A program made the translations under genes and the position numbers. From positions 62,001 to 126,000 of the IMG/VR virus record IMGVR_UViG_3300023174_000046: a DNA stretch of 64,000 nt; one strand, 5' to 3'. Numbering within the stretch: position 1 is the first letter of the stretch; every line of letters begins with the position of its first letter. Shown here piece by piece: positions 3,599 to 31,877 of this stretch. The notes beneath the pieces are model-generated. The model did not search any database. It had not been told where the DNA came from and worked only from the letters and a program-made list of their open reading frames with translations.

Positions 3599-4180
3599 GT
3601 GGACCCATATTATACACATAGACCCCACCTTACCAAGATATTAGAGCAGCTAGATTTTACTAAAACAGTTAGATGTGTAGAGTTTGGTTCAGGTGATGGC
3701 TCGGGAGAAGTTTTTAAACAGTTTACGGAGCGCTACCCAAATCTTAAAGTTGTTTGTCTTGAATCTGACAGGGAGTGGTTTAACAGAACATCAGTAAAGT
3801 ATCAATCAAATAATTATAGGTATAAATTTGTGGAAAATTGGACCAATACAATTAAAAGTATTAGTCCAGAAGAAGTATTTGACCTTGCTTTTATTGACAA
3901 TGGACCGACTTGGGATACACGCATTCAAATTCTGGAACAAATTAAAAATCAATGCAAGCATATCATTATTCATGATTATGATTATTATAATAAAGGCCAC
4001 ATGGGTTTAGCAGATGGTCTCAATCTTGAGTATTATGAAGCATACCGCAACACTGAGCATGATATCTATTCTGTAGGTGCAAATAGTTTTTTTGGTAAGT
4101 ATGCAAAAAATTTTATACTTGAGGCACATAGCACAGAGCTACCACCAACACTTGTATTAACAAATAAGACTTTAATTTAG
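3599..4180 (+). CDS. Class I SAM-dependent methyltransferase (possibly sugar O-methyltransferase)
   Basis: VEFGSGDGS motif I, acidic LESD, FDLAFIDNG, IIIHD; GTG start 2 nt after the folE stop. Confidence 0.7.
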   Translation: MDPYYTHRPHLTKILEQLDFTKTVRCVEFGSGDGSGEVFKQFTERYPNLKVVCLESDREWFNRTSVKYQSNNYRYKFVENWTNTIKSISPEEVFDLAFIDNGPTWDTRIQILEQIKNQCKHIIIHDYDYYNKGHMGLADGLNLEYYEAYRNTEHDIYSVGANSFFGKYAKNFILEAHSTELPPTLVLTNKTLI

Positions 4181-4225
4181 CTAAGGTGCTGGTGGTGTAA
4201 CAGTTGGTGTTAGTGTTACTGTTTA

Positions 4226-7168
4226 TTATATGTACCTTGTTGCAAATGTTGCATAATATGTTCTAATCGCTCCTATATTACAGTATAGCGGGCCACTAGC
4301 GTACGACCAAACACCGCCGGTACTTCTTTTAAGAACATGAAACGAGTTATCAAAATTAGGACTGCCTTCAAAAGTACTTACAAAAAGCCCTATTGAATTG
4401 TCTGAAAAGACATTAAGCTTTAATGATTGTATGCAACTGGCTGCAGCTGGATTTAAAGAAATTCCTCCCAGACCTGCACTCTGGATAGTTGCAATAACTG
4501 TATTTGATATGACTGTGTTTGTAGTAAAATTATATTCTATGAATCCTATTCCACCTCGTATAAAGGAGCTCGTCTTCTTTGTATATGCAATATATGCTAT
4601 ATTTTTATCTGTTTTACTGAAATCTAGTCTAATAAGAGGTGATCTACCGTCAGTATTGACACCACCACCAATGCCAGGATCAGTTTTATAATCAGTAGTT
4701 ATGCTAGCATCTGTATATATAGCATTACTATTAAAATATAGTGCACCGTTTGAATAGCATGCAATATGATAGTTTCCAGAGTAGTCGCAATTGTAATCAT
4801 AATTATAAACAATACTTGGACCACTAAAGATAGCAGTATTGCCTGGGTATGCATATATTGTGCTGCTATTTCCTGCTGGATAAGCCCAGCTATAGTTCAG
4901 CAAATTATTTTTACTCTGTACAGCGACTACCGGAGATCCGTTTACAAAAAAACTATATACAGATGAATTTAACAGCGTTGGTGTCGCCCATGTAACACCC
5001 CTATCATTTGAAGATGAAACATATAGTGATACACCATTAGTAGAGCTGTAATTATTAAAATATATATAATAATACGTATTCATACCGTCTATAAAGAGGT
5101 TATCGTTACAAGGGGAAAATGTTGCAGGTGGTGCAAGATTGGCAGGTGTCGAAATGGTATCCCACGATGCACCGTTCCATCTTTTGAGAGTTCTTACGAG
5201 ATTCGTCCCATCTGTAATCATTGCAACTAAGTTATTATTCGCGTCGTTCTCATAAGCCATAACCATTTGTGTTCTACTGTTTCCCGTATACGGGAGTGTT
5301 GTAACTCTGCTAAGTGTTGCGAGATCATTTGTATATTCTCTTATTTCAAAAGGACTGTTTGCAAGAGAAGTTCCTTGAGCTAAGAAAGACATTTTCTGCA
5401 GATTGCTACCAACAGCACCAAGAGAGAATTCATAGTAATAATTAATGGCTACTGCAGGGCTGAAATAATTTGCCGATGTACCTACAGCTATGAATTTGTT
5501 TATTCCTGGGCAATAACATATATCATTTATAGTTCCCAGACCACCAGCAGTTTCATCTGGTATATCGAGAGAATACCATGTTTGAAGATCAAAGCTATAT
5601 CTACATCCCCTTTTATTTGTATTAAAGTTAATAGGACCTACTAAAACATATACACCGTTACCATATATAATTTTCCAAAACGCATTATTAACAGCAACCG
5701 CTCCTGCATTAACATCAACACTTACCCAATTATTGTTTTGTAGTAATCCAATATCACTTGTTGCACTACCTGTGCGATTGATGGCCATTGTGAAACCTAT
5801 CCAGCTACCATTCACATAATTAGCTGCTTTATATTTTTGATTGTCGGTAAATGCAAGAGGACCAGTTACTGGCGTGCCACCACCATCTGCAAGAGTTGTC
5901 TTTAGATACCCGTTAACTAAAAATTGCGGGCTTGCTATATTATTATTAAATGCAGCACCGTATGTGTTTTGATATACACCCTGCGAAAATTCATATGGCT
6001 TTGTCCAGCTTGTACCGTAGTTACTTGTTTCCTGGATGGCGTTATAAGTTTCTCCTATCAGCGCTATTTTGCTCGAACCGCTGCATATAACATCAATGTG
6101 TGACTGACTACCAAATCCGTTATCTGGCAGTACACTCGATGTCCAAGATATGCCATCGTTTGAAGTATATAAATATCTTGTAGCACCACCGGTACCACCA
6201 TATGTAAGACCGAAAAATTTATTTAATAGAGTTGAGAATTTAACATTACAGCCAGTTGCGCTACCAGGGTTTGGACACATTTGATTGCCCTGCGTCCATG
6301 TTGTGCCGCCATTTGTAGAATAAAAAGATTTTTGCCCAGATTCAAGAACAGGATTTATAACTATTGTAGTATCGTTAGCCGCTACACTGCCCCAGACTTT
6401 TGTAGCGGGTAGAGTTACTTTTTGAAAGCTTACAGTAGCAGGTGTAACAGGCTTGGTCGGTGTGGGTGTTATTGTTGGTGTAGGTGTCAGTGAAATTGTA
6501 GGTGTTACTGTAGGTGTTAGTGAAATTGTAGGAGTTACAGTTGGCGTGGGTGTTAAAGAAATTGTAGGTGTTAGTGAAATTGTGGGGGTTACAGTTGGCG
6601 TGGGTGTTAATGAAATTGTAGGTGTTAGTGAAATTGTGGGGGTTACAGTTGGCGTGCAGGTGCGTGTTGGCGTAAGTGAAATTGTAGGTGTTACTGTTGG
6701 TGTTGCAGTGGGGGTTCCTGTGGGTGGTGGTGGCGTTACAGTTGGTGTTGGTGTCACAGTTGGTGTGCAGGTGCGCGTTGGTGTTAATGAAATTGTAGGT
6801 GTTACTGTTGGTGTAACAGTTGGTGTACAGGTGCGCGTTGGTGTAACAGTTGGTGACACCCCCGGTGTAGGTGTTGGTGTTACAGTTGGAGTACGCGTTG
6901 GTGTAACAGTCGGTGTACAGGTGCGTGTTGGCGTAAGTGAAATTGTAGGTGTCAGTGAAATTGTGGGTGTTGGTGTCAAAACTGGAAGCGGTGTATTGGT
7001 TGGGTTTGGTGTTACATTTGGTGGTGGGGTTACAGGAATTACTTGGTAATCTGTATATACATTTGTAACATTTACTACTGAAGCAAGATTTGTTTTTTTA
7101 TACTGTACACCGTTAATAGTTACATAATTACAGTCTGACGGCACTGCAGCGTCAGGTAGAATTATCAT
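4226..7168 (-). CDS. Putative virion adhesin/fibre: ~200 aa Pro/Thr-repeat stalk followed by BNR/Asp-box beta-propeller domains
   Basis: [16 protein letters not shown] repeats; Asp-box-like [41 protein letters not shown]. Confidence 0.75.
6440..7036 (-). repeat. Coding mosaic minisatellite (12- and 18-bp units encoding [16 protein letters not shown])
   Basis: Repeated gtgaaattgt[ag]gg and caggtgcg[ct]gttgg units directly visible. Confidence 0.95.
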
Positions 7169-7868: not shown

Positions 7869-8396
7869 ATGTACAGGAATGATATAGAAAATCTAAATAA
7901 TGCTTTCTTTAAAATACTCAATGAAGGTACTGCAGATTTGGGTCCACAGGCAGATTCTCAGCAAGGCCTTTCACCTGTTATACCAACTATAATCAAAACA
8001 AAAGAAGACGAAGAATGTGAGAATTGTAGTTGTGGTGATTCTGCTGCACCTGCTACAAGAGATCCCGATGAAATAGAGATGTCAAGAAGTGAACTATATA
8101 ACACAATTCATCATGCCGTTAGCTTATATTCAAAGCTCAAGACAATCAATAATCTTGAGGCTTGGGCAAGAGCAAAAATAACAAAAGCAGCCGATTATTT
8201 GAATTCTGTCAAACATTATCTTGATCATGAAGAAGTACAGAGCGAACAAAATGAAGAGATAGATCTCTTTAGCGCGTTTGATAAAGGATCAACAGATATC
8301 ATTGGTAAGCTTTCTGGTATTCTCTCTAGAGAGAGCAAAGAAAATCTCGAAAAGATTCTTTTTGAAGTTGTGCAGTTAATCGAAAAGAAGTCTTAG
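7869..8396 (+). CDS. Conserved T4-like hypothetical protein (LEAW..KIT.A.DYL domain), putative head-internal
   Basis: EMSRSEL...NLEAWARAKITKAADYLNSVKHYL; real start ATG 7869, 5 nt after TAAATA. Confidence 0.7.
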   Translation: MYRNDIENLNNAFFKILNEGTADLGPQADSQQGLSPVIPTIIKTKEDEECENCSCGDSAAPATRDPDEIEMSRSELYNTIHHAVSLYSKLKTINNLEAWARAKITKAADYLNSVKHYLDHEEVQSEQNEEIDLFSAFDKGSTDIIGKLSGILSRESKENLEKILFEVVQLIEKKS

Positions 8397-9181
8397 TAAT
8401 TCATTCTGCCTACAGTTAATTCACCATCAGCCTGATAAGGTGGGTTAGTAAGCTTGTCGTTATATGCTTTATCTCTATCCTTGATTAACTCTTTATTCAT
8501 AAAGCTACTCATTTCATTCTCTTCGCTGCTTTGAATGGTAAGATGTTTATCAAAAATTTTCTTTATCTTATCGTAGTTTTTAATGTAAAGTTTTTTAATT
8601 AAATTTATTTTTTGATTATCATTCAGTGTGCTATAAAGATTGCGTAATTCAGATGCACTTTTAATATTTTTGCCAAAAATTTCACTACCAAATTCTATTG
8701 TTGGGAATGTATAAATGTAGCCATGCTTTGCAAATGGTTCCATATTTTCTTTTGAAAAATCTTGAAAATAAGAAGGTGTACCGTCTTTCTTGACGCGTGT
8801 AAAGAGTGATTTCCTTGTGGGGTCTTGTTTTTCCTTATCACTCATAGCAAATATAACCTTATCTTTCTCTGGGTTATATTTTTTCAGAATCTCTTCTGAC
8901 CTAAACGGTGATTTTACTTCTATGATTTTATTAGGGTCTATTCCTGTAGATGAAATAATAAGTTTCTTCTCTTGAGCTGTAAACGGTCTTTCTTCAGTAT
9001 AGCCTGTTATTGCAATATATGAATCTGCATCGGGAAATGTTTTCTGTATATTTTCAAAAATGCTTTTATGACCTAAATGAAAAGGATGAAAGCCACCTGG
9101 AAAAATTACTATTGTTTTTCCTGCCGACTCAACAATGAAATGTTTCTTAAAGATATTTTCTACTAACAGATCAAATTTCAT
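8393..9181 (-). CDS. HIGH-superfamily (cytidylyltransferase-like) nucleotidyltransferase
   Basis: IVIFPGGFHPFHLGH (HxGH), RPFTAQEK, KSASELR. Confidence 0.82.
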   Translation of the reverse strand: MKFDLLVENIFKKHFIVESAGKTIVIFPGGFHPFHLGHKSIFENIQKTFPDADSYIAITGYTEERPFTAQEKKLIISSTGIDPNKIIEVKSPFRSEEILKKYNPEKDKVIFAMSDKEKQDPTRKSLFTRVKKDGTPSYFQDFSKENMEPFAKHGYIYTFPTIEFGSEIFGKNIKSASELRNLYSTLNDNQKINLIKKLYIKNYDKIKKIFDKHLTIQSSEENEMSSFMNKELIKDRDKAYNDKLTNPPYQADGELTVGRMNY

Positions 9182-10586: not shown

Positions 10587-11012
10587 TTATTCAACAAATC
10601 GACTTTTAAATTCAGCAGGCGGTGTACCAATTCTCACATTTATTATTCCATTATAATAATCATCTCGAAGTAGCACATCTCGAGATATCTGTTCTTTTAT
10701 TTCAAAATAAGCCAACTCCCACTTTGAATTGCATGTACGTAAAATCTTAAAAGTAAATTTCTCTTTACCAAGCTTTAGAATATCTGCGTTAAGATCGTTT
10801 GAGGAGCTTGTATAACCCTTCCAGTCCGATTCTTTCATTTCAATTCTATTTCTCGTTTTACCCTTAAGAGGCTTTCTTTTTAACCTGGATTTGCATTGTT
10901 TTTTACCGATGTATTTTTTATTTGTAATTACATTTGTTATTTCATATATAAAACCGAATGTTGTTTCGTCTAAAACGACACCTTCGTGCAGAAGCCAGTG
11001 ACCTGTATCCAT
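10587..11012 (-). CDS. GIY-YIG endonuclease
   Basis: FGFIYEITN...KKYIGKK, ESDWKGYTSS, YFE, YYN; TAAATA-N5-ATG. Confidence 0.88.
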   Translation of the reverse strand: MDTGHWLLHEGVVLDETTFGFIYEITNVITNKKYIGKKQCKSRLKRKPLKGKTRNRIEMKESDWKGYTSSSNDLNADILKLGKEKFTFKILRTCNSKWELAYFEIKEQISRDVLLRDDYYNGIINVRIGTPPAEFKSRFVE

Positions 11013-11735: not shown

Positions 11736-13195
11736 TAAAAATTGATTTTGATGGTAAAAAGAATAAGGCTATTCTCTCTGGTGATCATTTTGATGAAATA
11801 AGAGAAAATTTTTCTGTAAAAAATAAAGCCGCAGTTTTTTTAAAAAGATATGCCCGTTACATTCCGTCACGCACCTACAGTATTACTCCCACAGGAAGAT
11901 TTGATCCCTGTCTAACCCCGGAATTACAAAAGTTTTTTCTTGAAAAGCAGTATTCATGTTCTGTTGAAATTTCAGAGGATATTAAAAATATCATAACACC
12001 CGCTCTTTTTACATGGAAAAAAAATGCAAACTTCTCTGATACACCCTATAAACTAAAGCTCGATTTGCGCGATTATCAAGAAGAAATAGTTAAACAATGT
12101 CTTTCTTCTGGCAGAGGAACAGTAGTCCTTGCAACTGCAGGTGGGAAGACACTTGTAATGGCTTCATTAATATCATCTGTCTACCGCTTTAATAATAGCA
12201 AATTTAAATGTTTACTCATAGTACCAGATCGAGGCCTTGTAGAGCAAACATATAATGATTTTGTTCAATACGGTGTACCGTTCTCATTTTCAAAATGGAC
12301 AGGCGATAATAAGCTTGACTTGACTTCTAATATTATAATTGCAAATCTCGGCATTCTACAGAGTAAGAATTCAAATCTATCTTGGTTAGAGAATATTGAT
12401 ATGGTAGTAGTCGATGAAGTGCATAAGATTCGAAAAGGGAATGAAGTTAATAAACTTTTAGCATTAGCCAAAACAGCACATAAATTTGGATTTACAGGGA
12501 CTTTACCTGAGGAGAAAGAGGATCAGTGGAACATTATTGGTAAGATTGGACCAATATTGTATGAAAAGAATAGTTATGAACTACGAACTGAGAATTATGT
12601 AAGCAACGCGAATATACAGATGCTAAATGTTTTCTATAAAACTGTACCTAAGCGTGAAAGCAGCAATTTTAATCCCACAGATTTTTACAAGAAAGAGCTC
12701 GACTTTATTATTGAAAATAAATTCCGAAACGTATTATTATCAAAAATTGTTAATAAAGTTGAAAAAAACGTACTCATTTTAATTGATTTTATAAAGCATG
12801 GTGAAATACTTGAATCGGTTCTCAAGTTAAACTGCAACAATAAGAGGGTATTTTTTATTCGTGGCGAAGTAGAAGTCGAAGAAAGAGAGAAGATTAAAAA
12901 TATTATTGAAACTGATGATAATGTTGTTGTTATAGCTATTTCAAAAATATTTTCTACAGGTATTAATGTTAAGAATTTACACTACATTGTTTTTGCAGGC
13001 GGTGGCAAGGCGAAGATCAAGACTGTACAATCCATTGGTAGAGGTTTACGCTTGCATATCAACAAGGATAAGCTTATAATATTCGACATATCAGATCAAC
13101 TCTATTATGGTATACAACATACCAATAAAAGAAAACAAATTTATGAAAAAGAAAAAATCCAATACTACACCACCGACCTCCACGAAAAAGCCTAA
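11732..13195 (+). CDS. uvsW: SF2 DNA helicase UvsW
   Basis: LRDYQ, LATAGGKT, DEVH, GFTGT, FSTGIN, QSIGRGLR. Confidence 0.93.
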   Translation: MIKIDFDGKKNKAILSGDHFDEIRENFSVKNKAAVFLKRYARYIPSRTYSITPTGRFDPCLTPELQKFFLEKQYSCSVEISEDIKNIITPALFTWKKNANFSDTPYKLKLDLRDYQEEIVKQCLSSGRGTVVLATAGGKTLVMASLISSVYRFNNSKFKCLLIVPDRGLVEQTYNDFVQYGVPFSFSKWTGDNKLDLTSNIIIANLGILQSKNSNLSWLENIDMVVVDEVHKIRKGNEVNKLLALAKTAHKFGFTGTLPEEKEDQWNIIGKIGPILYEKNSYELRTENYVSNANIQMLNVFYKTVPKRESSNFNPTDFYKKELDFIIENKFRNVLLSKIVNKVEKNVLILIDFIKHGEILESVLKLNCNNKRVFFIRGEVEVEEREKIKNIIETDDNVVVIAISKIFSTGINVKNLHYIVFAGGGKAKIKTVQSIGRGLRLHINKDKLIIFDISDQLYYGIQHTNKRKQIYEKEKIQYYTTDLHEKA

Positions 13196-13646
13196 AAAAG
13201 ATAAACCTTTTTATGTTAGCCCGAAGGAATTCGAAGCTGAGATTACTATCTATTACAATACCGGTAACATGTCAATTAATCTTGGTGAATCCATTACTAA
13301 GATTGCAAATGGATTGAGCTACGCACCTAATTTTATTAATTATACATACAAAGACGATATGGTTGGCGATGCAATTGTGAAGATGTTTTCTGCATTAAAG
13401 AATAAGAAATTTAAACTAAATAGCGGGTTTAGTCCTTTTTCATATTTTACTACTATTGCTTTTCATGCATTTATTAATAGAATTAAAAAAGAAAAGAAAC
13501 ACCACGCTGCAATTAATGATTACAGAGAAAAAGTTTATACAGATTTAATTCATTCATGCCCCGGTGGTGAGCAAATTTACGTAAAGCCTTCAGACAGTAA
13601 TAATGAAGATGGTGAAAATGATGTCTTTAGTAATTTGAATGGTTAA
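13143..13646 (+). CDS. gp55: Late-transcription sigma factor gp55 (start likely MKKKK at 13143)
   Basis: YV..KEF, KIANGLSYAPNFINYTYKDDMVGDA, PFSYFTTIAFHAFINRIKKEKK. Confidence 0.92.
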   Translation: MKKKKSNTTPPTSTKKPKKDKPFYVSPKEFEAEITIYYNTGNMSINLGESITKIANGLSYAPNFINYTYKDDMVGDAIVKMFSALKNKKFKLNSGFSPFSYFTTIAFHAFINRIKKEKKHHAAINDYREKVYTDLIHSCPGGEQIYVKPSDSNNEDGENDVFSNLNG

Positions 13647-14688: not shown

Positions 14689-16490
14689 AAAAAATTATCT
14701 TTAACAAAATTTCAATAAAAAACTTTCTTTCTGTAGGAAGCGAGCCTGTCGTAATTGATTTTAAGACAGGGTTACATATTATTACAGGTCTTAATAAAGA
14801 TAAGGAAGACCGTCGTAATGGTGTTGGTAAATCTACTGTTGCTGATGCTATATACTTTGCTATTTTTGGTTCTACGTTGAGAGAGCTTAAGAAAGAGCAT
14901 ATTGTTAATAATACTAATAGAGAGAACTGTGAAGTTATCCTAGATTTTGATATTGAAGGATTTGATAGAAAAGATGAATATCAAATTATAAGAATGCTTG
15001 AACCGTCACGTTGCTATGTGTACAAGAACGGTGAAGACAAGACACGAGACAGCATTATTAATACTACTGAATATATTTTTGAAAAGATTAATTGTTCACC
15101 TGATATTTTTCAGAATTGTGTTATTATGACTGTTAATAATACTATACCTTTCATGGCAAAGAAGAAGATTGAAAAGCGAAAATTTATTGAAGGGATTTTT
15201 AATTTAGAAGTTTTTAGTACTATGTTGCAACGTCTTCGTGATGAATACAATGAATCAAAGAGAAACTTTGATATTGAATCAACAAAATGTACAGAGATTG
15301 AAAATAGCTTATCTCTACAGGTTACAGCAAAAGAAGTTTACAATAAAGAGCGTGACGCCAAAAGAGAGAAATATACCGGTCGTAAAGAAAGCAACATAAA
15401 GGAACTACAGCTACTTGACAAAAAAATAAATGAATTTACTGCTTTAGATATTAAGAAGATTGAGAAAGACATTAGCACACTTACAACAAAAGCTGAAAAA
15501 ATTGATCAAGAAATTAAAGTGTTGCGTGACAAGACTTCCTCATATCGCACACAGATTGAATTAAAAGAAAAAGACTACAAGCGAATTGGAACAGATAAAG
15601 ATGCTTGCCCTACATGTTTACGTGCACTAGAAGATAAAGATAAAAATCATATTAAAGAGGAGAAACAAAAAATTAAAAAAGAGATTAGTGATTTTGAAAA
15701 TAAGATCAACACTAATGTTGCAAAAGAAGAAGAGTCTTCTGCACTAGAGCTTAAGCTGTATGGAGCAGTAGAGAGCTTGAAGGGCAAGATTAATGCTTTT
15801 AATCTAGAGCAAAAAGAATTAGAGAGTATTAAAACTCGAATAAATCAATTAAATGTATGGCAAAAAGAGCTAGATATTGATCTCGCAGAACTTAGCAAGA
15901 CAAACAATCAACACGATACAAATATTGAAGATATTACAAAGCGACTTGAGGAAATAAAGAGTGTGCTTGAAAAGACAAAGATACATTTCAATATGCTTGA
16001 TGCTGTAAAATTTGTGTTATCTGAAGAAGGCGTAAAATCATATATTGTAAAAAAGATTCTTCAGCTCTTTAATAGCAAACTTGCTTATTATCTAAAGAAA
16101 ATGGATTCGAATTGCATTTGTATTTTTAATGAATATTTTGAAGAAGAGATTATTGATGAAAAGGGCAAACCATGTTCTTATTTTAATTTTAGTGGTGCAG
16201 AACGGAAGAATATAGATCTAGCATGTTTGTTTGCTTTTATGGATATAAGACGTTTACAAGGTAATGTCGCATTTAATTTTAGTGTGTATGATGAGCTGTT
16301 TGATTCATCTCTCGATGAAAAGGGTGTAGAGCTTGTACTGGGTATTTTACGAGAAAGAATTGAAAAATATAATGAATGTATTATGGTGATTAGTCACCGC
16401 AAAGAGAGTGTAAAATTTGCTTCAGGTGATATTATTTTTCTAGAAAAGAAAAACGGTATTACTAAACGTATTGAATACAGCGATTATTAG
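14685..16490 (+). CDS. gp46: Recombination ATPase subunit (Rad50/SbcC-like)
   Basis: KNFLSVG, NGVGKS, coiled coil with CPTC hook, FSGAE signature, DELFDSSLD, ISH. Confidence 0.95.
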   Translation: MKKIIFNKISIKNFLSVGSEPVVIDFKTGLHIITGLNKDKEDRRNGVGKSTVADAIYFAIFGSTLRELKKEHIVNNTNRENCEVILDFDIEGFDRKDEYQIIRMLEPSRCYVYKNGEDKTRDSIINTTEYIFEKINCSPDIFQNCVIMTVNNTIPFMAKKKIEKRKFIEGIFNLEVFSTMLQRLRDEYNESKRNFDIESTKCTEIENSLSLQVTAKEVYNKERDAKREKYTGRKESNIKELQLLDKKINEFTALDIKKIEKDISTLTTKAEKIDQEIKVLRDKTSSYRTQIELKEKDYKRIGTDKDACPTCLRALEDKDKNHIKEEKQKIKKEISDFENKINTNVAKEEESSALELKLYGAVESLKGKINAFNLEQKELESIKTRINQLNVWQKELDIDLAELSKTNNQHDTNIEDITKRLEEIKSVLEKTKIHFNMLDAVKFVLSEEGVKSYIVKKILQLFNSKLAYYLKKMDSNCICIFNEYFEEEIIDEKGKPCSYFNFSGAERKNIDLACLFAFMDIRRLQGNVAFNFSVYDELFDSSLDEKGVELVLGILRERIEKYNECIMVISHRKESVKFASGDIIFLEKKNGITKRIEYSDY

Positions 16491-17374
16491 TCTGAAGAAG
16501 TATAATTTCTATCGCCAACTGCTTGCGGTATAACTCTTCTACCAAATTCTCTTCGCGCAATATCCTCAATATCTGGCTCAAGTCCTGTTTCGAGAGCCTC
16601 TGGCTCTTTTGTTATGTCTTCAGGGTTAGCTAGCTTATAATAATCAACAGCTAGATCTACAAAGTTTTGAAAATAATCAAAATTATCTTTTGGATCAACC
16701 TTAAAAAACTCTTCTTTTTCTTTCTTATCCAACATATCTTCTGCTGTACTACGTGCTGCAGCTTCAATTTGTTTTCTTAGTTCTTCCGGATTGCTTGTTT
16801 CAAATGTATCAGACAATTCATCGTATACTCTTGGACTTATTTTATCATATTTGCCAAAATTTGGTGTTCCTGTTCTTGTAAAAATCTTTTCTGCTTCAAT
16901 GGTTGCAGGCACATCACTCTTTGATATTTCTTTATTTTTTGCTCCTGCTTCTACAGCCTTTTTAACTGCAGCTGGTGATGTGGCATTACCGCCTTCACCA
17001 TCTGTTCGTATAACATTAAGCAAGTTATCTGCAATACGAGCTGTATAACCAGCCTGAGTTTTGCCAAGCTTAAGCTCATTCTTAACAAGATCTATCAATT
17101 CAGCGCGAAACTTATCTTTGCTCCCCGGGTAATAAAGCTGATATTCAACACCATCAACTGTATGTGATGCAGGCTTAAAAAGTTTTGTTTTAATTGTATC
17201 AATTAGTCCCTTGACTTGATCATCAGATAAACCCTTAAAACCATAACCGCCACCTGCGCTTGCCCGTGGATCAGACGAGAAACCTAGATCACCTGGCCCA
17301 AAAACAGGTATTTCACTAATTAATTGTGTTTTTGCGTAAGCTTCAAAAATTAGCTTAGAGTCTTTATTATTCAT
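16487..17374 (-). CDS. Hypothetical late protein with capsid-targeting-like N-terminus
   Basis: MNNKDSKLIFEAY..LISE; TAAATA 8 nt upstream of ATG. Confidence 0.65.
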   Translation of the reverse strand: MNNKDSKLIFEAYAKTQLISEIPVFGPGDLGFSSDPRASAGGGYGFKGLSDDQVKGLIDTIKTKLFKPASHTVDGVEYQLYYPGSKDKFRAELIDLVKNELKLGKTQAGYTARIADNLLNVIRTDGEGGNATSPAAVKKAVEAGAKNKEISKSDVPATIEAEKIFTRTGTPNFGKYDKISPRVYDELSDTFETSNPEELRKQIEAAARSTAEDMLDKKEKEEFFKVDPKDNFDYFQNFVDLAVDYYKLANPEDITKEPEALETGLEPDIEDIARREFGRRVIPQAVGDRNYTSSD

Positions 17375-17410: not shown

Positions 17411-18628
17411 ATGGTTTCTCCCTTTGCTTCGCCCTTTGCATCACCTTTTGCACAACCCTTCCAAGCAGTACCAACAGGGCCCCAGGCTGCGCCACAGCAA
17501 ATGCCTTCTGTACCGCCTGAGGCAAATTTACCACGCGCAATAAATTACCTTGCAGATTATAGTGGTTGTGGTTTCTGGCGATTAATTTGGCCAGGGCACT
17601 TGCTTTGTGCACACCAAAAAGCTATTGTACATGCTTCTACAGTTATGTGCTTTGATCCACGCTGGTACGGTAACACACAAGCAATTCGCATTCAAAGACA
17701 AGCCACTGGACATCAAAGACAATTTTACGAGTTTCTTAAAAAACTTAGCGGTGAGATGGGATTTAGACTCATATACGAAATTGATGATATTATGTTTCAC
17801 GAAGATATTCCGGAATATAATAAGTTTAAACCTGCATTTAAGAATGATGAGATAAGAAACAATGCAATTGAAATGATGCGCATGTCAGATGAAATTACTG
17901 TTACATGTGATTTCATGAAAGAATATTATATGAATAAAACAGGCAACAAAAATGTTACTGTTATTCCGAATTACCCACCAAAATGGTGGATTGGGCACTT
18001 TTATAATGAAAAGAAAATAAGCCAAAATTATGATACACATCGCAAGCGTCCTCGTATTTTATACGCAGGCTCCGGTGCACACTTTGATGTTGAAAATAGA
18101 GTAAATCAAAATGATGACTTCCGTCACGTATTACAATCGATTGTTGATACACGACACAAATACCAGTGGGTATTTTTAGGAGCGTTTCCTCTCGCCTTAC
18201 AACAATTTGTTAAAGACGGTACATTTGAATACCATCCATGGGAATTACTCTATAGGTATCCAGAAAAAATTTATAACTTGAATATTAACATGATGGTTGC
18301 TCCTTTGCAGGATAATAACTTTAACAAAGCAAAGAGCGATCTCAAGTATATTGAGGCGTGTAGCTACGGCATACCCATTGCTTGTCAAGACCTTTGCACA
18401 TACGCGCAAGCGCCATTTAAATTCAAGACTGGTGAAGAAATGATTCAAAGAATTGAGGAAGTGTTAGAAAAGAAATCCAAATATATGACATACTGCCAGC
18501 ATGCAAGAGCATATGCTGAGACAAGATGGCTAGAAAATGAAGACAACATTAATACCTATCATGAATTGTATACGTTACCTTACGGGCACAAAGATAGAAA
18601 ATTGCTGAATAAAATTAATGGCTTGTAA
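17411..18628 (+). CDS. GT-B fold glycosyltransferase with N-terminal (SPFA)x3 repeat
   Basis: DYSGCGFWRL.WP, IYEIDD, VTVIPN, ILYAGS..H, APLQDNNFNKAKSDLKYIE; promoter TTGAAT-N16-TAATAT-N6-ATG. Confidence 0.85.
   Translation: MVSPFASPFASPFAQPFQAVPTGPQAAPQQMPSVPPEANLPRAINYLADYSGCGFWRLIWPGHLLCAHQKAIVHASTVMCFDPRWYGNTQAIRIQRQATGHQRQFYEFLKKLSGEMGFRLIYEIDDIMFHEDIPEYNKFKPAFKNDEIRNNAIEMMRMSDEITVTCDFMKEYYMNKTGNKNVTVIPNYPPKWWIGHFYNEKKISQNYDTHRKRPRILYAGSGAHFDVENRVNQNDDFRHVLQSIVDTRHKYQWVFLGAFPLALQQFVKDGTFEYHPWELLYRYPEKIYNLNINMMVAPLQDNNFNKAKSDLKYIEACSYGIPIACQDLCTYAQAPFKFKTGEEMIQRIEEVLEKKSKYMTYCQHARAYAETRWLENEDNINTYHELYTLPYGHKDRKLLNKINGL
17417..17461 (+). repeat. 12-bp coding tandem repeat (SPFA SPFA SPFA QPF)
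   Basis: tctccctttgct tcgccctttgca tcaccttttgca caacccttc. Confidence 0.85.
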
Positions 18629-21650: not shown

Positions 21651-22801
21651 TGTCTCTCAATAAAGATATCCGGAGCGTACTTGATACTATTGATAGTATC
21701 AATCCACATGCAACCTACCTTTCGGAAGGCACTCTTTCAAAGGTAGACGGTTGGATTAGTACAGGTTCATATGTATTAAACGCTATTATTTCAGGTAGCA
21801 TCAATAAAGGTGTGCCTAGAAATAGAGTAACTTTGTTTGCAGGAGAGAGCATGACTGGTAAAACCTATGTTATTACTAAAATCCTCGCTAATGCTCAAAA
21901 GGAAGGGTTAGTTCCGGTTATTTTTGATACCGAAGGCGCCATTGATTCTGAATCAGCAGCTAAGCTCGGCCTTGACACAACAAAAGTAAAATATGTTCCC
22001 TGTTTTTCAATTGAAGAGACAAGAAACACAATTTATAATTTCCTTACAAAAGTTAAGGAAAATGGTCAAGAGGGAAAGTTTATTATTGCTATTGATTCTC
22101 TTGGTAATCTTGAGAATCAGCTCTCTTTAGATAGAATGACTAAAGAGAGCAGCTCAACTGATATGGGTACAAGAGCAAGAGCAATTAAGAGCTTGCTCAA
22201 GACGTGCACAAATATGTCACGCTTAACTAAGACAACATTCTTAATTACCAACCATACGTATGATGACCCAAGTGCAATGTATGAAAGTATGATCAAGCAG
22301 CAACCAGGCGGTAAAAGTGTTTGGTATTTGTCAGATGTAACAGTACAATTAGCACGTAAGCCTGAAAAAGATGACGGCGGTAAAGCAGTAGATAGCAAAT
22401 TAGCTGTTGGTCAACGCAATTACCCAGGTGTCATTCTCCGTGCACTTACTGTTAAGAATAGATTTGTCCGCCAATACCTACAAGGTGAAATGTATTTGAG
22501 TTTTGAGTCTGGTCTTAACAAATACTATGGTCTACTGGACCTTGCAGTTGGTTTCGGTATTGTTGTACAGAATGGTGCAACATATGCTCTTGCTGATGGC
22601 ACTAAGTTGGGATATTATAAGACATGGAGAACAGATGAAGAGCTTTGGAATACGAAATTGTTACCTGCTATTGAAGCTAAGATTAATATCGAGTGGCAGT
22701 ACGGTAATTCAGATGAAGTACCGGACGAACTACCTTCTGAAGAAGCACCAGTTGCAAAGAAAACAAAAGGTGCTAAACTGGCTGAAGATGTCGACGAATA
22801 A
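21650..22801 (+). CDS. uvsX: RecA-like recombinase UvsX
   Basis: WISTGSYVLN, AGESMTGKT, FDTE, IDSLGNL, DMGTRA, TNHTY, PGG. Confidence 0.95.
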   Translation: MSLNKDIRSVLDTIDSINPHATYLSEGTLSKVDGWISTGSYVLNAIISGSINKGVPRNRVTLFAGESMTGKTYVITKILANAQKEGLVPVIFDTEGAIDSESAAKLGLDTTKVKYVPCFSIEETRNTIYNFLTKVKENGQEGKFIIAIDSLGNLENQLSLDRMTKESSSTDMGTRARAIKSLLKTCTNMSRLTKTTFLITNHTYDDPSAMYESMIKQQPGGKSVWYLSDVTVQLARKPEKDDGGKAVDSKLAVGQRNYPGVILRALTVKNRFVRQYLQGEMYLSFESGLNKYYGLLDLAVGFGIVVQNGATYALADGTKLGYYKTWRTDEELWNTKLLPAIEAKINIEWQYGNSDEVPDELPSEEAPVAKKTKGAKLAEDVDE

Positions 22802-23525
22802 GAAACCTGCTATAGTAGTTCCTGTTAGTGGTGGTATGGATAGTACCGTGCTGCTATATAAAGCTGCAGGTGAGTTTGAAAAACTACACTGCATAAGCTT
22901 TGACTACAATCAAAAGCATAGAAAAGAATTAAATTATGCAACACTGCAAGTAGGCTTAATAAGAGATAAAATTGGTAAAGAAAATATTACTCACGATATA
23001 ATTGATCTATCTTTTTTTAAAGATATTGCTTCGACATCTGCTCTCACAAATACTAATATTGCTGTTGCAAAAGCTCGTAATGTAATGGGCGATCCACAAA
23101 CAGTAAATTATGTACCGTTTAGAAATTTAATGCTACTTAGCATATGTCTTGCACATGCTGAAAGTCATAACACTACAACAGTATGGCATGGGGCTGCGCA
23201 AGCTGATAGTATTGCTGGTTATTGGGATGGCAGTACTGAGTTTATTACCGAGCTCAATAAAGTGGCTAGTTTGAATCGTAGATTACGAATTAATGTGGAG
23301 GCGCCTTTATTAACAAAGTCAAAGTTAGATATTGTTACATTGGGTGTACACTTGAACGTACCCTTTAAAGATACATGGACATGCTATGAGGGTGAACAAG
23401 AAGCATGCGGTGAATGTACTGCATGCAGTCTTCGCTTACAAGGTTTTATTAAAGCAGGCTTTATTGATCCTATCCCTTATAAGAAAGAAATAGACTGGAA
23501 TTCTTTCAACTGTATTCCATTATAA
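22788..23525 (+). CDS. queC: 7-cyano-7-deazaguanine synthase (real start MSTNKK at 22788)
   Basis: SGGMDS PP-loop, FDYNQKH..E, YVPFRN, TWTCY..CGECTAC..R Zn site. Confidence 0.95.
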   Translation: MSTNKKPAIVVPVSGGMDSTVLLYKAAGEFEKLHCISFDYNQKHRKELNYATLQVGLIRDKIGKENITHDIIDLSFFKDIASTSALTNTNIAVAKARNVMGDPQTVNYVPFRNLMLLSICLAHAESHNTTTVWHGAAQADSIAGYWDGSTEFITELNKVASLNRRLRINVEAPLLTKSKLDIVTLGVHLNVPFKDTWTCYEGEQEACGECTACSLRLQGFIKAGFIDPIPYKKEIDWNSFNCIPL

Positions 23526-23529
23526 TAAA

Positions 23530-24180
23530 ATGTGTGGTATATTTGGAGCTACAGATAAAGAAAGATTTAAATCTCTTTATAATTTAAATAAGCAGAGAGG
23601 TAATTTTTCTTTTGGTTGCTGCTTCTTAACACAAGATAGACGGTCTCAGTATTGTGAATCTGCACCTGGTGAAGTTAATCTTGATGATTTAATGAGCGAT
23701 AATTACTACTATCTTCTAGGTCATACACAGGCCCCTACTTCATCAGCTCGTGGGTATGATAGAGCCACTTCACATCCTTTTGTGGATGGTGATTGGGTTG
23801 TTGCACATAACGGTGTATTATCTAATTTTGAAATCTTAAAGCAAAAATATGTACCAGAGCACGCAAACCCTGTCGATAGTAGCATCATACCAGTGCTCTT
23901 AAGCTATATGCAGGAAGATGATGAGGTACAGACAATTAAAAATGTATTAGAAGCTATTGAGGGAACTTATAGTTTGTGGCTCTTCAATCATGTTAGTAAA
24001 AATATCTATGTTGTACGGTGCGGTAGTACACTCTATGGTGATATTATTAAATGTGAGTTCTCATCATACCCAGATATTGGCTTGAGTGAACTTGATGATA
24101 ATGCTCTTTATTTGGTTACACAAGAGGGGTTAACAAAGGTCTCAGGATTTGATGGCAACAGCCCGTTTTTTATTATATGA
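23530..24180 (+). CDS. Stand-alone class II (Ntn) glutamine amidotransferase
   Basis: MCGIFG N-terminal nucleophile, RG, GHTQAPT, HPF, AHNGVL.NF, VDS. Confidence 0.88.
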   Translation: MCGIFGATDKERFKSLYNLNKQRGNFSFGCCFLTQDRRSQYCESAPGEVNLDDLMSDNYYYLLGHTQAPTSSARGYDRATSHPFVDGDWVVAHNGVLSNFEILKQKYVPEHANPVDSSIIPVLLSYMQEDDEVQTIKNVLEAIEGTYSLWLFNHVSKNIYVVRCGSTLYGDIIKCEFSSYPDIGLSELDDNALYLVTQEGLTKVSGFDGNSPFFII

Positions 24181-24851
24181 ATATTTGTATTTTTAGCTGT
24201 ACTACTAAGAGCGATGAGACACAGACAGATCTATATAAGAGTTGTTTAGAATTTGAGCATCTAGATGTGTATTTTAAGAAGGAAAACGCAGATGGGTTAT
24301 CTAAATCGTATAATAATTTTTTATATAGTAAGGAGGCTAGCGAATATGATATTGTTGTTTTTTGCCATGATGATGTTTTTATCGATGATCTTAAGCTAAA
24401 AAACAAATTACAAGCTGCAACTGACCTTGGTTACGATATTATAGGTCTTGCTGGCTGTGTTAATCCGAAAATTATAAGACCTGCACTATGGCATCTTATG
24501 GCAGGCGGATTTAATAGCAATAATTTAAGAGGAATTGTAAATCACTATCAGGATGAAACACGCGCGCATCATTTTGCAACAAATTTTGGACCTACACCTT
24601 CGCGGGTTGCATTATTAGATGGTCTTTTTCTTGCTGTTAACGTTGGAAAGGCAAAAGAGGTTGGATGGGGCTTTAATGAAAACTACAATTTTCATCACTA
24701 TGATATTGCCTCTTGTCTAGACGCAAATAATAAAAAATTAAAATTAGGCGTTTACCCTATAAATGTTATTCACTGCTCGCACGGGCTCCGATCTTTTGAT
24801 GACAACTTTAAGAATAGTGAAGATGCCTTTATGCGAGAATATTCTCGTTGA
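24177..24851 (+). CDS. GT-A fold glycosyltransferase-like protein
   Basis: GLSKSYN, VVFCHDDV (DxD-like), IIGLAG, LDGLFLA, FHHYD, H.S.G. Confidence 0.8.
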   Translation: MNICIFSCTTKSDETQTDLYKSCLEFEHLDVYFKKENADGLSKSYNNFLYSKEASEYDIVVFCHDDVFIDDLKLKNKLQAATDLGYDIIGLAGCVNPKIIRPALWHLMAGGFNSNNLRGIVNHYQDETRAHHFATNFGPTPSRVALLDGLFLAVNVGKAKEVGWGFNENYNFHHYDIASCLDANNKKLKLGVYPINVIHCSHGLRSFDDNFKNSEDAFMREYSR

Positions 24852-30671: not shown

Positions 30672-31008
30672 TTCTAATCCGGGTGATGATGGTGAGAATA
30701 TGAAGAAGAAGAAAGAAGACAATCTCAAGCAATCACAGGAATTAGATAAAATTCTTAAGACTGCTCTTAATAACTATTTGATGTCGCAAGCATCAGAGGT
30801 TAAGAGCAAGACTCGCGATATTGATGCACTGAGAGCAACCATAGAAGAGTTTTTAAACAGCTATATTCTCCTGGGGTACTCACCGGTAGGTGAACCGGTG
30901 CATGTTATTTCAGCTCACAATCAACAAGAAGCAGATTCACTTTCTGCTTTACTAAATAAATTTCTTTTGAATCAAAGCGATAGGCCCGAAAAAGATTTTC
31001 CCTTTTAA
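30652..31008 (+). CDS. Hypothetical late protein
   Basis: TAAATA-N6-ATG embedded in the upstream gene. Confidence 0.6.
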   Translation: MKKRKDNSNPGDDGENMKKKKEDNLKQSQELDKILKTALNNYLMSQASEVKSKTRDIDALRATIEEFLNSYILLGYSPVGEPVHVISAHNQQEADSLSALLNKFLLNQSDRPEKDFPF

Positions 31009-31019
31009 ATTCTAAAACA

Positions 31020-31877
31020 ATGATTGTTATTCTTGGTGGCGGATTTGTCGGTAAGCATCTATATAATTTTTTACAAGATAAATATTTTAACGTAAAGCTC
31101 GTAACTAAATCTGAAGTAGATTATTCTGATGAAAAGGTTTTAACTGATTTCTTTTTTAGTTGCAAGCCACGTTTTGTTATTAATTGTTCTGGTTATACCG
31201 GTTACCCTAACGTTGATGGTTGTGAAGCAAATAAAGAAGATTGTTTATTCTACAATGTACAAGCACCACTCAACGTATGCAATGTATGTTCAAAGCTTAA
31301 TATTAAAGTTATACACATTTCTTCAGGCTGTATATACAGCGGCTATGAAAAATACTTTACAGAAGAAGATGTACCTAACTTCGGTATTTTTAATAGTGAG
31401 TCGAGCTTTTATTCAAAAACAAAGCATTTGTTCGAAGTTGCATGTGCCCCATTTAAAGACAATACTGCTATATTACGTGTACGGATGCCTTTTACAAATA
31501 CAATAGATCGCAAGAATTATCTCTATAAATTATACAAATATAACAATCTTATTAGCCTTAAAAACAGTGTGACATATCTTGAGGATTTAAATCGGTTTAT
31601 TTTTACACTGTGTCAAGGTAATAATTTTAAAGGCGGTATATACAATGTAGTCAGCTCAGAGCCCATACTTGCAACTGATGTTGTCTCTATTTTTAAAAGC
31701 AATGGAATCGAGAATACTGAATGGCGCTATGTGGATTTAAACGAACTTGATATCAAAGCTAATCGATCAAACTGTCTTCTTTCTAATGACAAGATAACCA
31801 ACCTTGGGTTTACCTTTCCAAATGCGCATGATGTTATTGATAAGTGCGTTAAAGATATCAAGCAGCTAATTGTATGA
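31020..31877 (+). CDS. NDP-4-keto-6-deoxyglucose 3,5-epimerase/4-reductase (RmlD-like, NRS/ER type; NDP-rhamnose synthesis)
   Basis: ILGGGFVG Rossmann fold, GYTGYPNVDGCE, SSGCIY, EED.PNF, FYSKTK, LRVRMP. Confidence 0.85.
   Translation: MIVILGGGFVGKHLYNFLQDKYFNVKLVTKSEVDYSDEKVLTDFFFSCKPRFVINCSGYTGYPNVDGCEANKEDCLFYNVQAPLNVCNVCSKLNIKVIHISSGCIYSGYEKYFTEEDVPNFGIFNSESSFYSKTKHLFEVACAPFKDNTAILRVRMPFTNTIDRKNYLYKLYKYNNLISLKNSVTYLEDLNRFIFTLCQGNNFKGGIYNVVSSEPILATDVVSIFKSNGIENTEWRYVDLNELDIKANRSNCLLSNDKITNLGFTFPNAHDVIDKCVKDIKQLIV

What the first reader, a model, noticed from the sequence alone, without database searches (positions are those of the whole stretch)
3599..31877. Dispersed (methyl)rhamnosylation toolkit: GT-B next to the polymerase, NRS/ER-type epimerase-reductase and a methyltransferase behind folE
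Seen: a GT-B gene (17411-18628) with its own promoter directly upstream of gp43. An NDP-rhamnose epimerase/reductase (31020-31877) sits between clamp and primase, and a SAM methyltransferase starts 2 nt after folE. Established: NRS/ER-type enzymes make NDP-L-rhamnose. Inference: the phage may supply a rhamnose donor, possibly O-methylated. The acceptor could be DNA (replisome location) or Thr/Ser-rich virion proteins (Pro/Thr stalks at 6440-7036 and 63762-63858).
Basis: partly seen in the sequence, partly recalled or inferred. Interest (0 to 1): 0.6.

Follow-up and report, generated by a model that had tools for sequence, protein, structure and literature searches.

The report
Phage sugar genes, not one toolkit
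A freshwater T4-like phage really does carry a glycosyltransferase, a plant/giant-virus-type rhamnose synthase and a small methyltransferase, but comparison with relatives shows three independently inherited genes rather than one rhamnosylation kit, and folE belongs to a separate 7-deazaguanine pathway.

Summary

- **31020-31877** is an NRS/ER / mimivirus-L780-type 3,5-epimerase/4-reductase. All catalytic residues are invariant in 121 homologues. An RmlB-type 4,6-dehydratase lies 96 kb away, outside the window. There is no RmlC or RmlA, so a two-enzyme route to NDP-L-rhamnose is plausible.
- **17411-18628** is a GT4-like GT-B. It is a core gene of a large uncultured freshwater T4-like clade, fixed between gp46 and gp43, and more conserved (67-69%) than the polymerase (56-58%). 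It persists unchanged in a subclade that lacks the rhamnose synthase.
- **3599-4180** is a cation-dependent-type class I O-methyltransferase. It is absent from 17 of 17 relatives. Its few homologues sit in phage glycan islands.
- **folE** belongs with QueD, QueE, QueC, QueF and a GATase, a complete preQ0/preQ1 set. No DpdA was found.

No dCMP/dUMP hydroxymethylase was found, so nothing supports DNA as the acceptor. The promoter claim could not be verified. A rhamnose donor is likely; a single linked "toolkit" is not supported, and the acceptor remains unknown.

The parts
31020..31877 (+). NRS/ER (UGER)-type NDP-4-keto-6-deoxyglucose 3,5-epimerase/4-reductase, 285 aa
   Evidence: PF04321 8e-22. 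PDB 4qqr 4e-26 and 7jid 6e-20, against RmlD at 40 bits or less. TIGR01214 rmlD scores 86 bits, below its cut-off of 224. G6, G8, G11, S102, C104, Y131, K135 and K170 are invariant in 121 homologues. C104 and K170 align to L780 Cys108 and Lys175. The same position between o118 and o94 is kept in a relative at 55% identity.
17411..18628 (+). GT4-like GT-B glycosyltransferase, 405 aa, with a disordered N-terminal (S/G)P(F/Y)-repeat tail. Core gene of the clade. Donor and acceptor unknown.
   Evidence: phrog_7162 5e-25. Model pLDDT 85.5. Z 20-24 to GT4 enzymes. 1922 homologues, the top 120 at 62% identity or more. Syntenic gp46-GT-gp43. 67-69% identity where polB is 56-62%.
3599..4180 (+). Small class I SAM-dependent methyltransferase of cation-dependent O-methyltransferase fold, 193 aa. 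Sporadic accessory gene.
   Evidence: Motif I ExGxGxGS and invariant DLxFID and HDYDYYN blocks. Model pLDDT 83.8. Z 13.5-14.9 to SafC, COMT, CCoAOMT, TrmR, MycF, SpnH. ESM Atlas: viral SAM-methyltransferase clusters, some PF13578. 0 of 17 relatives carry it. Truncated remnant in L012-L014. Homologues lie in glycan islands.
2946..3596 (+). FolE, GTP cyclohydrolase I; first step of the 7-deazaguanine pathway
   Evidence: PF01227 8e-48. phrog_2197 2e-59. 62-94% identity in relatives.
841..1482 (-). QueD-like (PTPS family) with a C-terminal extension
   Evidence: PF01242 2e-17. Cx3HG motif read in the translation.
22788..23525 (+). QueC, 7-cyano-7-deazaguanine synthase. The listed TTG ORF from 22503 is probably too long.
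   Evidence: PF06508 1e-54, covering residues 104-318 of the long ORF. Present in 17 of 17 relatives.
23530..24180 (+). Class-II glutamine amidotransferase directly after QueC, the same QueC-GATase order as in KVP40
   Evidence: PF13522 1e-6. In KVP40, 0124 (QueC) is followed by 0125, a PF00310 protein.
24177..24851 (+). GT-A-type glycosyltransferase-like protein (Glyco_tranf_2_5), 224 aa; second core GT of the replication module
   Evidence: PF13712 6e-11. Present in 16 of 17 relatives; the 17th contig ends before the site. No PDB or cultured-phage match.
18657..21233 (+). gp43 family-B DNA polymerase (context)
   Evidence: PF00136 and PF03104. About 31% identity to cyano- and pelagimyophage polymerases.
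4226..7168 (-). 980-aa protein: N-terminal Pro/Thr repeat region (residues 45-243) plus a body with Asp-box/BNR-like motifs; strain-specific
   Evidence: Translation and composition. Tandem DNA repeats of period 18 and 54. BNR_2 only at E 0.0046, below cut-off. Absent from 5 relatives.
63762..63858 (+). Short Pro/Thr linker inside a large (more than 1187 aa) protein that runs off the window
   Evidence: Translation. No Pfam hit.

Best explanation

1. **31020-31877** encodes a bifunctional 3,5-epimerase/4-reductase of the plant NRS/ER / mimivirus L780 type. An RmlB-type NDP-glucose 4,6-dehydratase lies 96 kb away in the same genome. Together they would convert host dTDP- or UDP-glucose to NDP-beta-L-rhamnose in two steps, without RmlC (inferred from homology; no activity shown).
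2. **17411-18628** encodes a GT4-like GT-B that is a core, very strongly conserved gene of the replication-module gene block in a large clade of uncultured freshwater T4-like phages. It keeps its sequence in a subclade that lacks the rhamnose synthase. Phage-made rhamnose is therefore not its obligatory donor, and its acceptor must be something invariant across the clade (unknown).
3. **3599-4180** encodes a small cation-dependent-type O-methyltransferase, most likely a sugar O-methyltransferase that sits in glycan islands in other phages. Its position behind folE is incidental.

folE itself is part of a complete preQ0/preQ1 (7-deazaguanine) set. The rhamnose is most likely used by one of the variable glycosyltransferases in the glycan island just upstream of the window. 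That island also holds GDP-mannose 3,5-epimerase, a second methyltransferase and GT2- and GT47-like genes. The target would be a virion or host-envelope glycan (inference).
For: **Enzyme identities**
- NRS/ER type: and for the L780 catalytic Cys/Lys.
- RmlB: 6bi4 2e-95.
- No RmlC and no RmlA in a record that CheckV rates 100% complete.
- RmlB orthologues (54-73% identity) occur only in records that also have the synthase. The two near-complete synthase-negative genomes have none.

**GT-B as a core gene**
- 1922 homologues and conserved synteny.
- Identity 67-69%, against polB 56-62%, gp41 58-59% and QueC 59%.
- The synthase is present in 10 of 17 GT-B-bearing records. The 6 true negatives form one clade on the GT-B tree (100/98, one change). 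In those genomes its flanking genes o118 and o94/o68 lie close together, leaving no room for it.
- The synthase-negative G006 carries a different 4,6-dehydratase plus another SDR, so donor modules are swappable.

**Methyltransferase**
-.

**folE context**
- QueD, QueC and GATase, QueE-like just outside the window, QueF.

**Glycan island**
-.
Against: - No biochemical or expression data exist. No RNA run holds the region.
- Hosts of the synthase-negative subclade could supply dTDP-rhamnose themselves, so the core GT-B could still be a rhamnosyltransferase.
- Co-occurrence rests on 17 records, most of them 33-66% complete fragments, and presence/absence follows phylogeny. It therefore cannot separate function from descent.
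- The synthase has kept one position inside the replication module across deep divergence (47-55% identity), which the 'accessory sugar gene' reading does not explain.
- The link from rhamnose to any particular island glycosyltransferase is weak. The RXYLT1_C-like GT occurs in 3 of 17 records, all synthase-positive; about 0.18 by chance.
Confidence: 0.55

Rival explanations
1. One reading: one dispersed toolkit. RmlB and NRS/ER make NDP-L-rhamnose, the GT-B next to gp43 is the rhamnosyltransferase, and the methyltransferase O-methylates the sugar. The acceptor is Thr/Ser-rich virion proteins.
For: All parts exist in one genome. GT-B-fold rhamnosyltransferases are known (own knowledge). PT-rich stretches exist. 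Sugar O-methyltransferases that act on rhamnose (SpnH) are among the tied structural neighbours.
Against: The GT-B is retained at undiminished conservation in a clade without the synthase and without an RmlB orthologue. The methyltransferase is in 0 of 17 relatives. The 980-aa PT protein is in 0 of 5. Nothing in the GT-B fold singles out rhamnose.
Confidence: 0.15
2. DNA hypermodification. The two core glycosyltransferases of the replication module (GT-B and the Glyco_tranf_2_5 protein next to QueC-GATase) glycosylate a modified base, for example a 7-deazaguanine derivative. Variable donor modules such as the rhamnose pair supply the sugar.
For: GT-B, QueC and the GT-A are all core genes and interleaved with gp46, gp43, UvsX and gp41. 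A complete preQ0/preQ1 set is present. The GT-B is more conserved than the polymerase, as expected for an invariant acceptor. T4 keeps its DNA alpha-glucosyltransferase near genes 46/47/55 (own knowledge; a lead only).
Against: No DpdA was detected, although it is reported as the signature of 7-deazaguanine in DNA (PMC10516641): PF01702, KVP40.0122 and the CxCxxC motif all gave nothing. There is no ThyA-family hydroxymethylase to provide a hydroxyl acceptor. T4 glucosyltransferases are not among the top structural matches; a cyanophage 'DNA alpha-GT' ranks only 32nd at TM 0.54. Gene position in T4-like genomes is weak evidence of function.
Confidence: 0.07
3. The core GT-B acts on a small metabolite (a sugar phosphate, a thiol precursor, or a pterin as in cyanobacterial tetrahydrobiopterin glucosyltransferase), reprogramming host metabolism. 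It has nothing to do with rhamnose.
For: The best structural neighbours are mostly small-molecule GT4 enzymes: sucrose-phosphate synthase, BshA, MshA, GlgM, TreT, SenB, and BGluT at Z about 20. An invariant small acceptor would explain the very high conservation. The phage makes pterin intermediates through FolE and the PTPS-like QueD.
Against: All GT4 hits are tied within about 3 Z units, so no acceptor class stands out. Polysaccharide and lipid GT4 enzymes (WaaG, PimA, PglA) score similarly. QueC, QueE and QueF show the pterin flux goes to deazaguanine.
Confidence: 0.1
4. The 31020 product is only a 4-reductase (RmlD-like), or makes a different 6-deoxyhexose, and depends on a host RmlC.
For: It hits the RmlD_sub_bind Pfam family, and some sources name homologues 'dTDP-4-dehydrorhamnose reductase'.
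Against: It scores far below the rmlD equivalog cut-off (86 against 224 bits). It is closer to the bifunctional NRS/ER and L780 than to any RmlD. The Cys/Lys epimerisation pair is invariant in 121 sequences.
Confidence: 0.1

Closest known systems
Arabidopsis NRS/ER (PDB 4QQR) and mimivirus L780 UDP-L-rhamnose synthase (PDB 7JID)
   Same: Single-domain extended SDR. The GxGxxG, Ser, YxxxK and Cys/Lys epimerisation residues all align and are invariant. These are the best sequence matches among solved structures.
   Different: Identity is low. The host is a bacteriophage. The partner dehydratase is of bacterial RmlB type (6bi4 323 bits) rather than the mimivirus R141 type (6vlo 182 bits). Nucleotide preference (dTDP or UDP) is unknown.
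Bacterial RmlABCD dTDP-L-rhamnose pathway
   Same: An RmlB-type 4,6-dehydratase and the same end product are expected.
   Different: No RmlA and no RmlC in the genome. The last enzyme fails the rmlD equivalog cut-off and appears to combine the RmlC and RmlD steps.
GT4-family GT-B glycosyltransferases (sucrose-phosphate synthase, BshA, MshA, PimB', WaaG)
   Same: Two-Rossmann GT-B fold over residues about 39-394, Z 20-24.
   Different: No hit to Pfam Glycos_transf_1. 8-13% identity. By eye the first Glu of the EX7E motif is not in place. It carries an N-terminal disordered (S/G)P(F/Y) repeat. It is a core gene of a phage replication module.
T4 alpha- and beta-glucosyltransferases (DNA hmC glucosylation)
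   Same: GT-B fold, phage-encoded, located among replication and recombination genes.
   Different: No hydroxymethylase in this genome. No special structural closeness. No evidence of a DNA acceptor.
Cation-dependent class I O-methyltransferases, including the sugar O-methyltransferases MycF, SpnH and MeT1
   Same: Fold match over the whole protein, Z 13.5-14.9. Motif I and acidic motifs are conserved.
   Different: Shorter (193 aa). No Pfam hit. Substrate unknown. It is not DpdM, which belongs to DUF3109 and has CxxxCxxCC.
7-deazaguanine gene sets of KVP40/nt-1-like T4-type vibriophages
   Same: FolE, QueD, QueF and QueC followed by a class-II GATase. QueC is 37% identical.
   Different: No homologue of the KVP40 gene between folE and queF (KVP40.0122), and no TGT-family hit. 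The genes are scattered, and two glycosyltransferases are interleaved.

Membership tests
NRS/ER (UGER) bifunctional 3,5-epimerase/4-reductase | Extended-SDR Rossmann motif GxGxxG and the Ser...YxxxK reductase triad | tested here: met
   G6, G8, G11, S102, Y131 and K135 are invariant in 121 homologues.
NRS/ER (UGER) bifunctional 3,5-epimerase/4-reductase | Cys/Lys acid-base pair for epimerisation (L780 Cys108/Lys175, shown by mutagenesis) | tested here: met
   C104 and K170 align to these residues in the HMMER alignment to 7jid and are invariant. The residue roles come from PMC9614988.
NRS/ER (UGER) bifunctional 3,5-epimerase/4-reductase | Closer to NRS/ER and L780 than to monofunctional RmlD | tested here: met
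   4qqr 95 bits and 7jid 75 bits, against the best RmlD at 40 bits.
NRS/ER (UGER) bifunctional 3,5-epimerase/4-reductase | A 4,6-dehydratase partner is present and a separate 3,5-epimerase is absent | tested here: met
   RmlB-type enzyme at genome 189521-190486. PF00908 absent.
NRS/ER (UGER) bifunctional 3,5-epimerase/4-reductase | Converts NDP-4-keto-6-deoxy-D-glucose to NDP-beta-L-rhamnose with NADPH | not testable with these tools
   Needs an enzyme assay.
RmlD, dTDP-4-dehydrorhamnose reductase (TIGR01214 equivalog) | Score above the curated equivalog cut-off | tested here: not met
   86.4 bits against a cut-off of 224.
GT-B fold glycosyltransferase, GT4-like | Two Rossmann-like domains with an inter-domain cleft | tested here: met
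   Model pLDDT 85.5, pTM 0.82. Z 20-24 with 300-319 aligned residues to GT4 structures.
GT-B fold glycosyltransferase, GT4-like | Sequence membership (Pfam Glycos_transf_1 / CAZy GT4) and the EX7E motif | tested here: inconclusive
   No Pfam hit; only phrog_7162. By eye the second Glu (E315) is invariant, but the first position is not Glu. No CAZy or dbCAN models were available.
T4-type DNA glucosyltransferase system | A hydroxymethylated pyrimidine acceptor made by a ThyA-family hydroxymethylase | tested here: not met
   PF00303 absent from the whole genome.
T4-type DNA glucosyltransferase system | Structural closeness to T4 alpha- or beta-GT | tested here: not met
   Neither is in the top 50 of the Foldseek or VIA lists. 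The S-TIM5 'DNA alpha-GT' ranks 32nd, TM 0.54.
Cation-dependent class I O-methyltransferase | Class I SAM-methyltransferase fold with motif I | tested here: met
   ExGxGxGS is invariant. The model gives Z 13.5-14.9 to SafC, COMT, CCoAOMT, MycF and SpnH.
Cation-dependent class I O-methyltransferase | Metal-binding acidic triad and O-methyl transfer to a sugar hydroxyl | tested here: inconclusive
   Invariant D95/D100 and D126/D128/N131 are candidates, but their geometry was not checked. Glycan-island context of homologues is seen in 2 of 2 loci. No assay.
DpdM, dPreQ1 methyltransferase | DUF3109 family with a CxxxCxxCC metal site | tested here: not met
   The window protein has a Rossmann methyltransferase fold and no such motif. 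DpdM features come from PMC10516641.
Phage 7-deazaguanine DNA modification system | preQ0 synthesis genes FolE, QueD, QueE, QueC | tested here: met
   plus QueF and the GATase.
Phage 7-deazaguanine DNA modification system | A DpdA-family DNA transglycosylase (the signature protein) | tested here: not met
   PF01702 gave nothing at E 0.01 or below. KVP40.0122 gave nothing. No CxCxxC zinc motif in a suitable ORF. The divergent DpdA3 and DpdA4 families could not be searched, because no reference sequence was at hand.

The most novel reading that the evidence does not exclude
The clade's invariant pair of glycosyltransferases (GT-B and GT-A) sits inside the replication module beside a complete preQ0/preQ1/GATase pathway that lacks any recognisable DpdA. 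This could mark a new DNA hypermodification: a glycosylated 7-deazaguanine. One version is N-glycosylation of the amidine of dG+ or the amine of dPreQ1, by analogy with EarP arginine rhamnosylation. Lineage-specific donor modules such as RmlB plus NRS/ER would decide which sugar is attached.
Probability: 0.05. Interest if true: 0.9.

Novelty: new member of a known kind. Interest (0 to 1): 0.4.

Why it matters
Phage-encoded nucleotide-sugar genes and glycosyltransferases are known as a class, so the rhamnose donor pair is an incremental addition. It is a bacteriophage example of the two-enzyme, RmlC-free route so far characterised in plants and giant viruses, here paired with a bacterial-type dehydratase.

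The more useful outcome is the re-sorting of the evidence. It directs experiments away from a 'rhamnosylated DNA' idea resting on gene position.

It directs them towards two concrete open questions in an abundant, uncultured freshwater T4-like clade:
- What does a glycosyltransferase that is more conserved than the DNA polymerase act on?
- How does a complete 7-deazaguanine pathway operate without a detectable DpdA?

Tried and rejected
**Searches that found nothing**
- DpdA: the TGT Pfam model, the KVP40 gene between folE and queF, and a CxCxxC regex all found nothing. The paper's supplements with DpdA3/DpdA4 identifiers are not held, so those families stayed untested.
- ThyA-family hydroxymethylase: absent.
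- RmlC and RmlA: absent.
- PADLOC scan of 10 unknowns: nothing useful.
- Glyco_tranf_2_5 protein against PDB sequences and cultured phages: no match.
- Megablast of the region against cultured phages: no match.
- PF13394 is not in the library.
- A search for 'DUF366' in papers returned only DUF3669 items.
- Sequencing runs: only freshwater DNA metagenomes kept as contigs, no RNA.

**Ideas considered and set aside**
- Promoters: sigma-70-like sites and the T4 late motif TATAAATA are at or below chance.
- Methyltransferase as DpdM: rejected on family and fold.
- The cytidylyltransferase-like gene 8393-9181 as a sugar nucleotidyltransferase. It shares the synthase's presence pattern. With the AAA_28 kinase at genome 60351-61097 it looks more like a split NadR-type NAD salvage pair. 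This is unresolved.
- Pterin glucoside idea: tetrahydrobiopterin glucosyltransferases are hit but tied with all other GT4 enzymes.

- The large representative protein search was not used. The word search and fold searches had already placed the proteins.

Full report
**Setting.** The window is bases 62001-126000 of a 217,413-bp virus record that CheckV rates 100% complete. GC content is 35.7%. The gene content is T4-like:
- PhoH, a UvsY-like protein, a UvsW-type helicase, gp47/gp46-like proteins and a family-B polymerase;
- UvsX, a DnaB-type helicase, gp32, a primase, terminase, sheath and baseplate proteins.

The polymerase is only about 31% identical to those of cultured cyano- and pelagimyophages, and megablast finds no cultured relative. 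Near-identical DNA occurs only in lake and freshwater metagenomes.

**The epimerase/reductase (31020-31877).**
- The 285-aa product hits RmlD_sub_bind (8e-22) and Epimerase.
- It falls far below the rmlD equivalog cut-off, 86 against 224 bits.
- Among solved structures its best matches are Arabidopsis NRS/ER (4qqr, 4e-26) and the mimivirus L780 UDP-L-rhamnose synthase (7jid, 6e-20). The best bacterial RmlD scores 40 bits.
- In the printed alignment C104 and K170 fall on L780 Cys108 and Lys175, the residues reported as catalytic for epimerisation (PMC9614988).
- G6, G8, G11, S102, C104, Y131, K135 and K170 are invariant across 121 homologues.

No RmlC and no RmlA are present. That fits a two-enzyme route from host NDP-glucose to NDP-L-rhamnose. 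L780 is reported to accept both UDP- and dTDP-linked substrates. The nucleotide used here is open.

**The GT-B (17411-18628).**
- Pfam and NCBIfam are silent; phrog_7162 'glycosyltransferase' matches at 5e-25.
- The AlphaFold2 model built on 34 homologues has pLDDT 85.5. It is a GT-B that aligns at Z 20-24 over 300-319 residues to GT4 enzymes: sucrose-phosphate synthase, BshA, MshA, PimB', WaaG, TreT and others.
- All these hits are tied, so no acceptor class can be read from the fold.
- The nearest Atlas and BFVD clusters are viral 'glycosyl transferases group 1'.

The family is large: 1922 hits, the top 120 at 62% identity or more, on contigs up to 225 kb. The gene always lies between gp46 and gp43. 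In four more distant relatives it is 67-69% identical. The comparison values are 56-62% for the polymerase, 58-59% for gp41, 59% for QueC in the two relatives where it was scored, and 46-48% for UvsX. It is therefore a core gene under unusually strong constraint.

**Co-inheritance.**
- Of 17 GT-B-bearing records, 10 have the synthase. In 6 of the 7 negatives the expected site lies inside the contig. In G006 and G008 the flanking genes lie close together, leaving no room for it.
- On a GT-B tree the six negatives form one clade (100/98), needing a single change.
- RmlB orthologues occur only in synthase-positive records.
- The synthase-negative G006 carries a different 4,6-dehydratase and another SDR in its own island.
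- The GT-A-type Glyco_tranf_2_5 gene (24177-24851) and QueC are core genes, in 16 of 17 and 17 of 17 records.

The donor module thus varies by lineage while the GT-B does not. This argues against an obligatory GT-B/rhamnose partnership. A host supply of dTDP-rhamnose in the negative clade cannot be excluded.

**The methyltransferase (3599-4180).**
- It starts at GTG 2 nt after the folE stop.
- It has motif I and conserved acidic blocks.
- The model (pLDDT 83.8) matches cation-dependent class I O-methyltransferases at Z 13.5-14.9. The tie includes the sugar O-methyltransferases MycF, SpnH and MeT1.
- Only 11 homologues were found. Two were examined in context, and both lie in phage glycan islands rich in glycosyltransferases, one beside DUF366 as in this genome's own island.
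- It is absent from all 17 relatives and reduced to a 75-residue remnant behind folE in close relatives.
- It is not DpdM, which is a DUF3109 metalloprotein.

**folE in context.** The genome holds a full 7-deazaguanine set:
- QueD (841-1482), FolE, QueC (about 22788-23525) and a class-II GATase (23530-24180) are inside the window.
- A QueE-like radical-SAM gene lies 152 nt before the window, and QueF lies at genome 42913-43833.
- KVP40 shows the same QueC-GATase order.
- No DpdA was found. DpdA is reported as the signature of DNA deazaguanine, but the divergent DpdA3 and DpdA4 families could not be tested.
- No ThyA-family hydroxymethylase exists.

**Other sugar genes.** Just upstream of the window (genome 51.5-60 kb) lies a variable glycan island. 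It holds DUF366, a GDP-mannose 3,5-epimerase (2c59, 4e-97), a methyltransferase (phrog_3382), an RXYLT1_C-like glycosyltransferase, a GT2 and several unknowns. The RXYLT1_C-like gene occurs in 3 of 17 records, all synthase-positive. That is a weak lead only.

**Acceptor.** The Pro/Thr stretches exist. The 980-aa protein carrying the long one is absent from five relatives. No expression data are available, and promoter scans are uninformative.

**Verdict.** A rhamnose donor is likely. A single rhamnosylation toolkit is not supported, and neither is a DNA acceptor. The acceptor of the core GT-B is the real open question.

Noticed in passing
window 841-1482(-), 2946-3596(+), 22788-24180(+); L139:1306-2055(-) = genome 61099-61848; genome 42913-43833: A complete FolE/QueD/QueE/QueC/QueF plus class-II GATase set (preQ0/preQ1, possibly G+) is scattered over about 45 kb. 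Most of it is core in the clade. No DpdA-family transglycosylase was detected.
   Followed up: partly
L005:7575-8159(-) = genome 51575-52159, outside the window: A DUF366 protein (PF04017, 1.5e-23; PDB 2ddz only at 1e-6) is the most conserved protein in the comparison, at 77-79% identity in the distant relatives. It borders the glycan island here and in L138. Its function is unknown.
   Followed up: partly
window 17411-17530: The GT-B has a disordered N-terminal tail (pLDDT below 50) with three conserved (S/G)P(F/Y) repeats and an invariant PPE..L.R block. It looks like a docking motif for an unknown partner.
   Followed up: no
window 24177-24851(+): A second core glycosyltransferase-like gene (Glyco_tranf_2_5) lies directly between the QueC-GATase pair and the gp41 helicase. 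It has no match in PDB sequences or in cultured phages.
   Followed up: partly
window 4226-7168(-): A strain-specific 980-aa protein. About 200 residues are TPT/ISL Pro-Thr repeats, encoded by DNA tandem repeats of period 18 and 54. The body carries several SxDxGxTW-like Asp-box motifs and is probably a BNR/sialidase-like propeller.
   Followed up: partly
window 10587-11012(-): A SegE-type GIY-YIG homing-endonuclease-like gene (PF19835, 6e-30), unusually well conserved at 70-74% in distant relatives.
   Followed up: no
window 8393-9181(-) and L139:558-1304(-) = genome 60351-61097: A cytidylyltransferase-like protein and an AAA_28/dNK-like kinase, possibly a split NadR-type NAD salvage pair. 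The first shares the presence/absence pattern of the rhamnose synthase.
   Followed up: partly
window 16487-17374(-): A 295-aa acidic, Cys-free ORF with no family hit is inserted on the opposite strand between gp46 and the GT-B. It is present only in the synthase-positive relatives compared (G001, G005, G011).
   Followed up: no
L005:8190-9185(-) = genome 52190-53185, outside the window: A plant-type GDP-mannose 3,5-epimerase (2c59, 4e-97) in a phage, implying GDP-L-galactose or GDP-L-gulose as a further donor.
   Followed up: partly
L006:13024-15086(-) = genome 194024-196086; genome 146-157 kb: Two adjacent LCIB-like beta-carbonic-anhydrase-family genes. Separately, a genome-specific island of about ten ORFs of roughly 250 aa includes a radical-SAM/SPASM protein. 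A second radical-SAM/SPASM gene lies next to QueF.
   Followed up: no
window 13107-13646(+): A 179-aa ORF with a weak sigma-70 region-2 hit, 69-76% identical in distant relatives, lies just before gp47/gp46. It is probably a gp55-like late sigma factor.
   Followed up: no
G007, G013, G014, G017 (relatives), synthase matches: The synthase matches in four relatives each include one in-frame TGA. This is probably read-through of a slightly earlier C-terminal stop. It was not examined.
   Followed up: no
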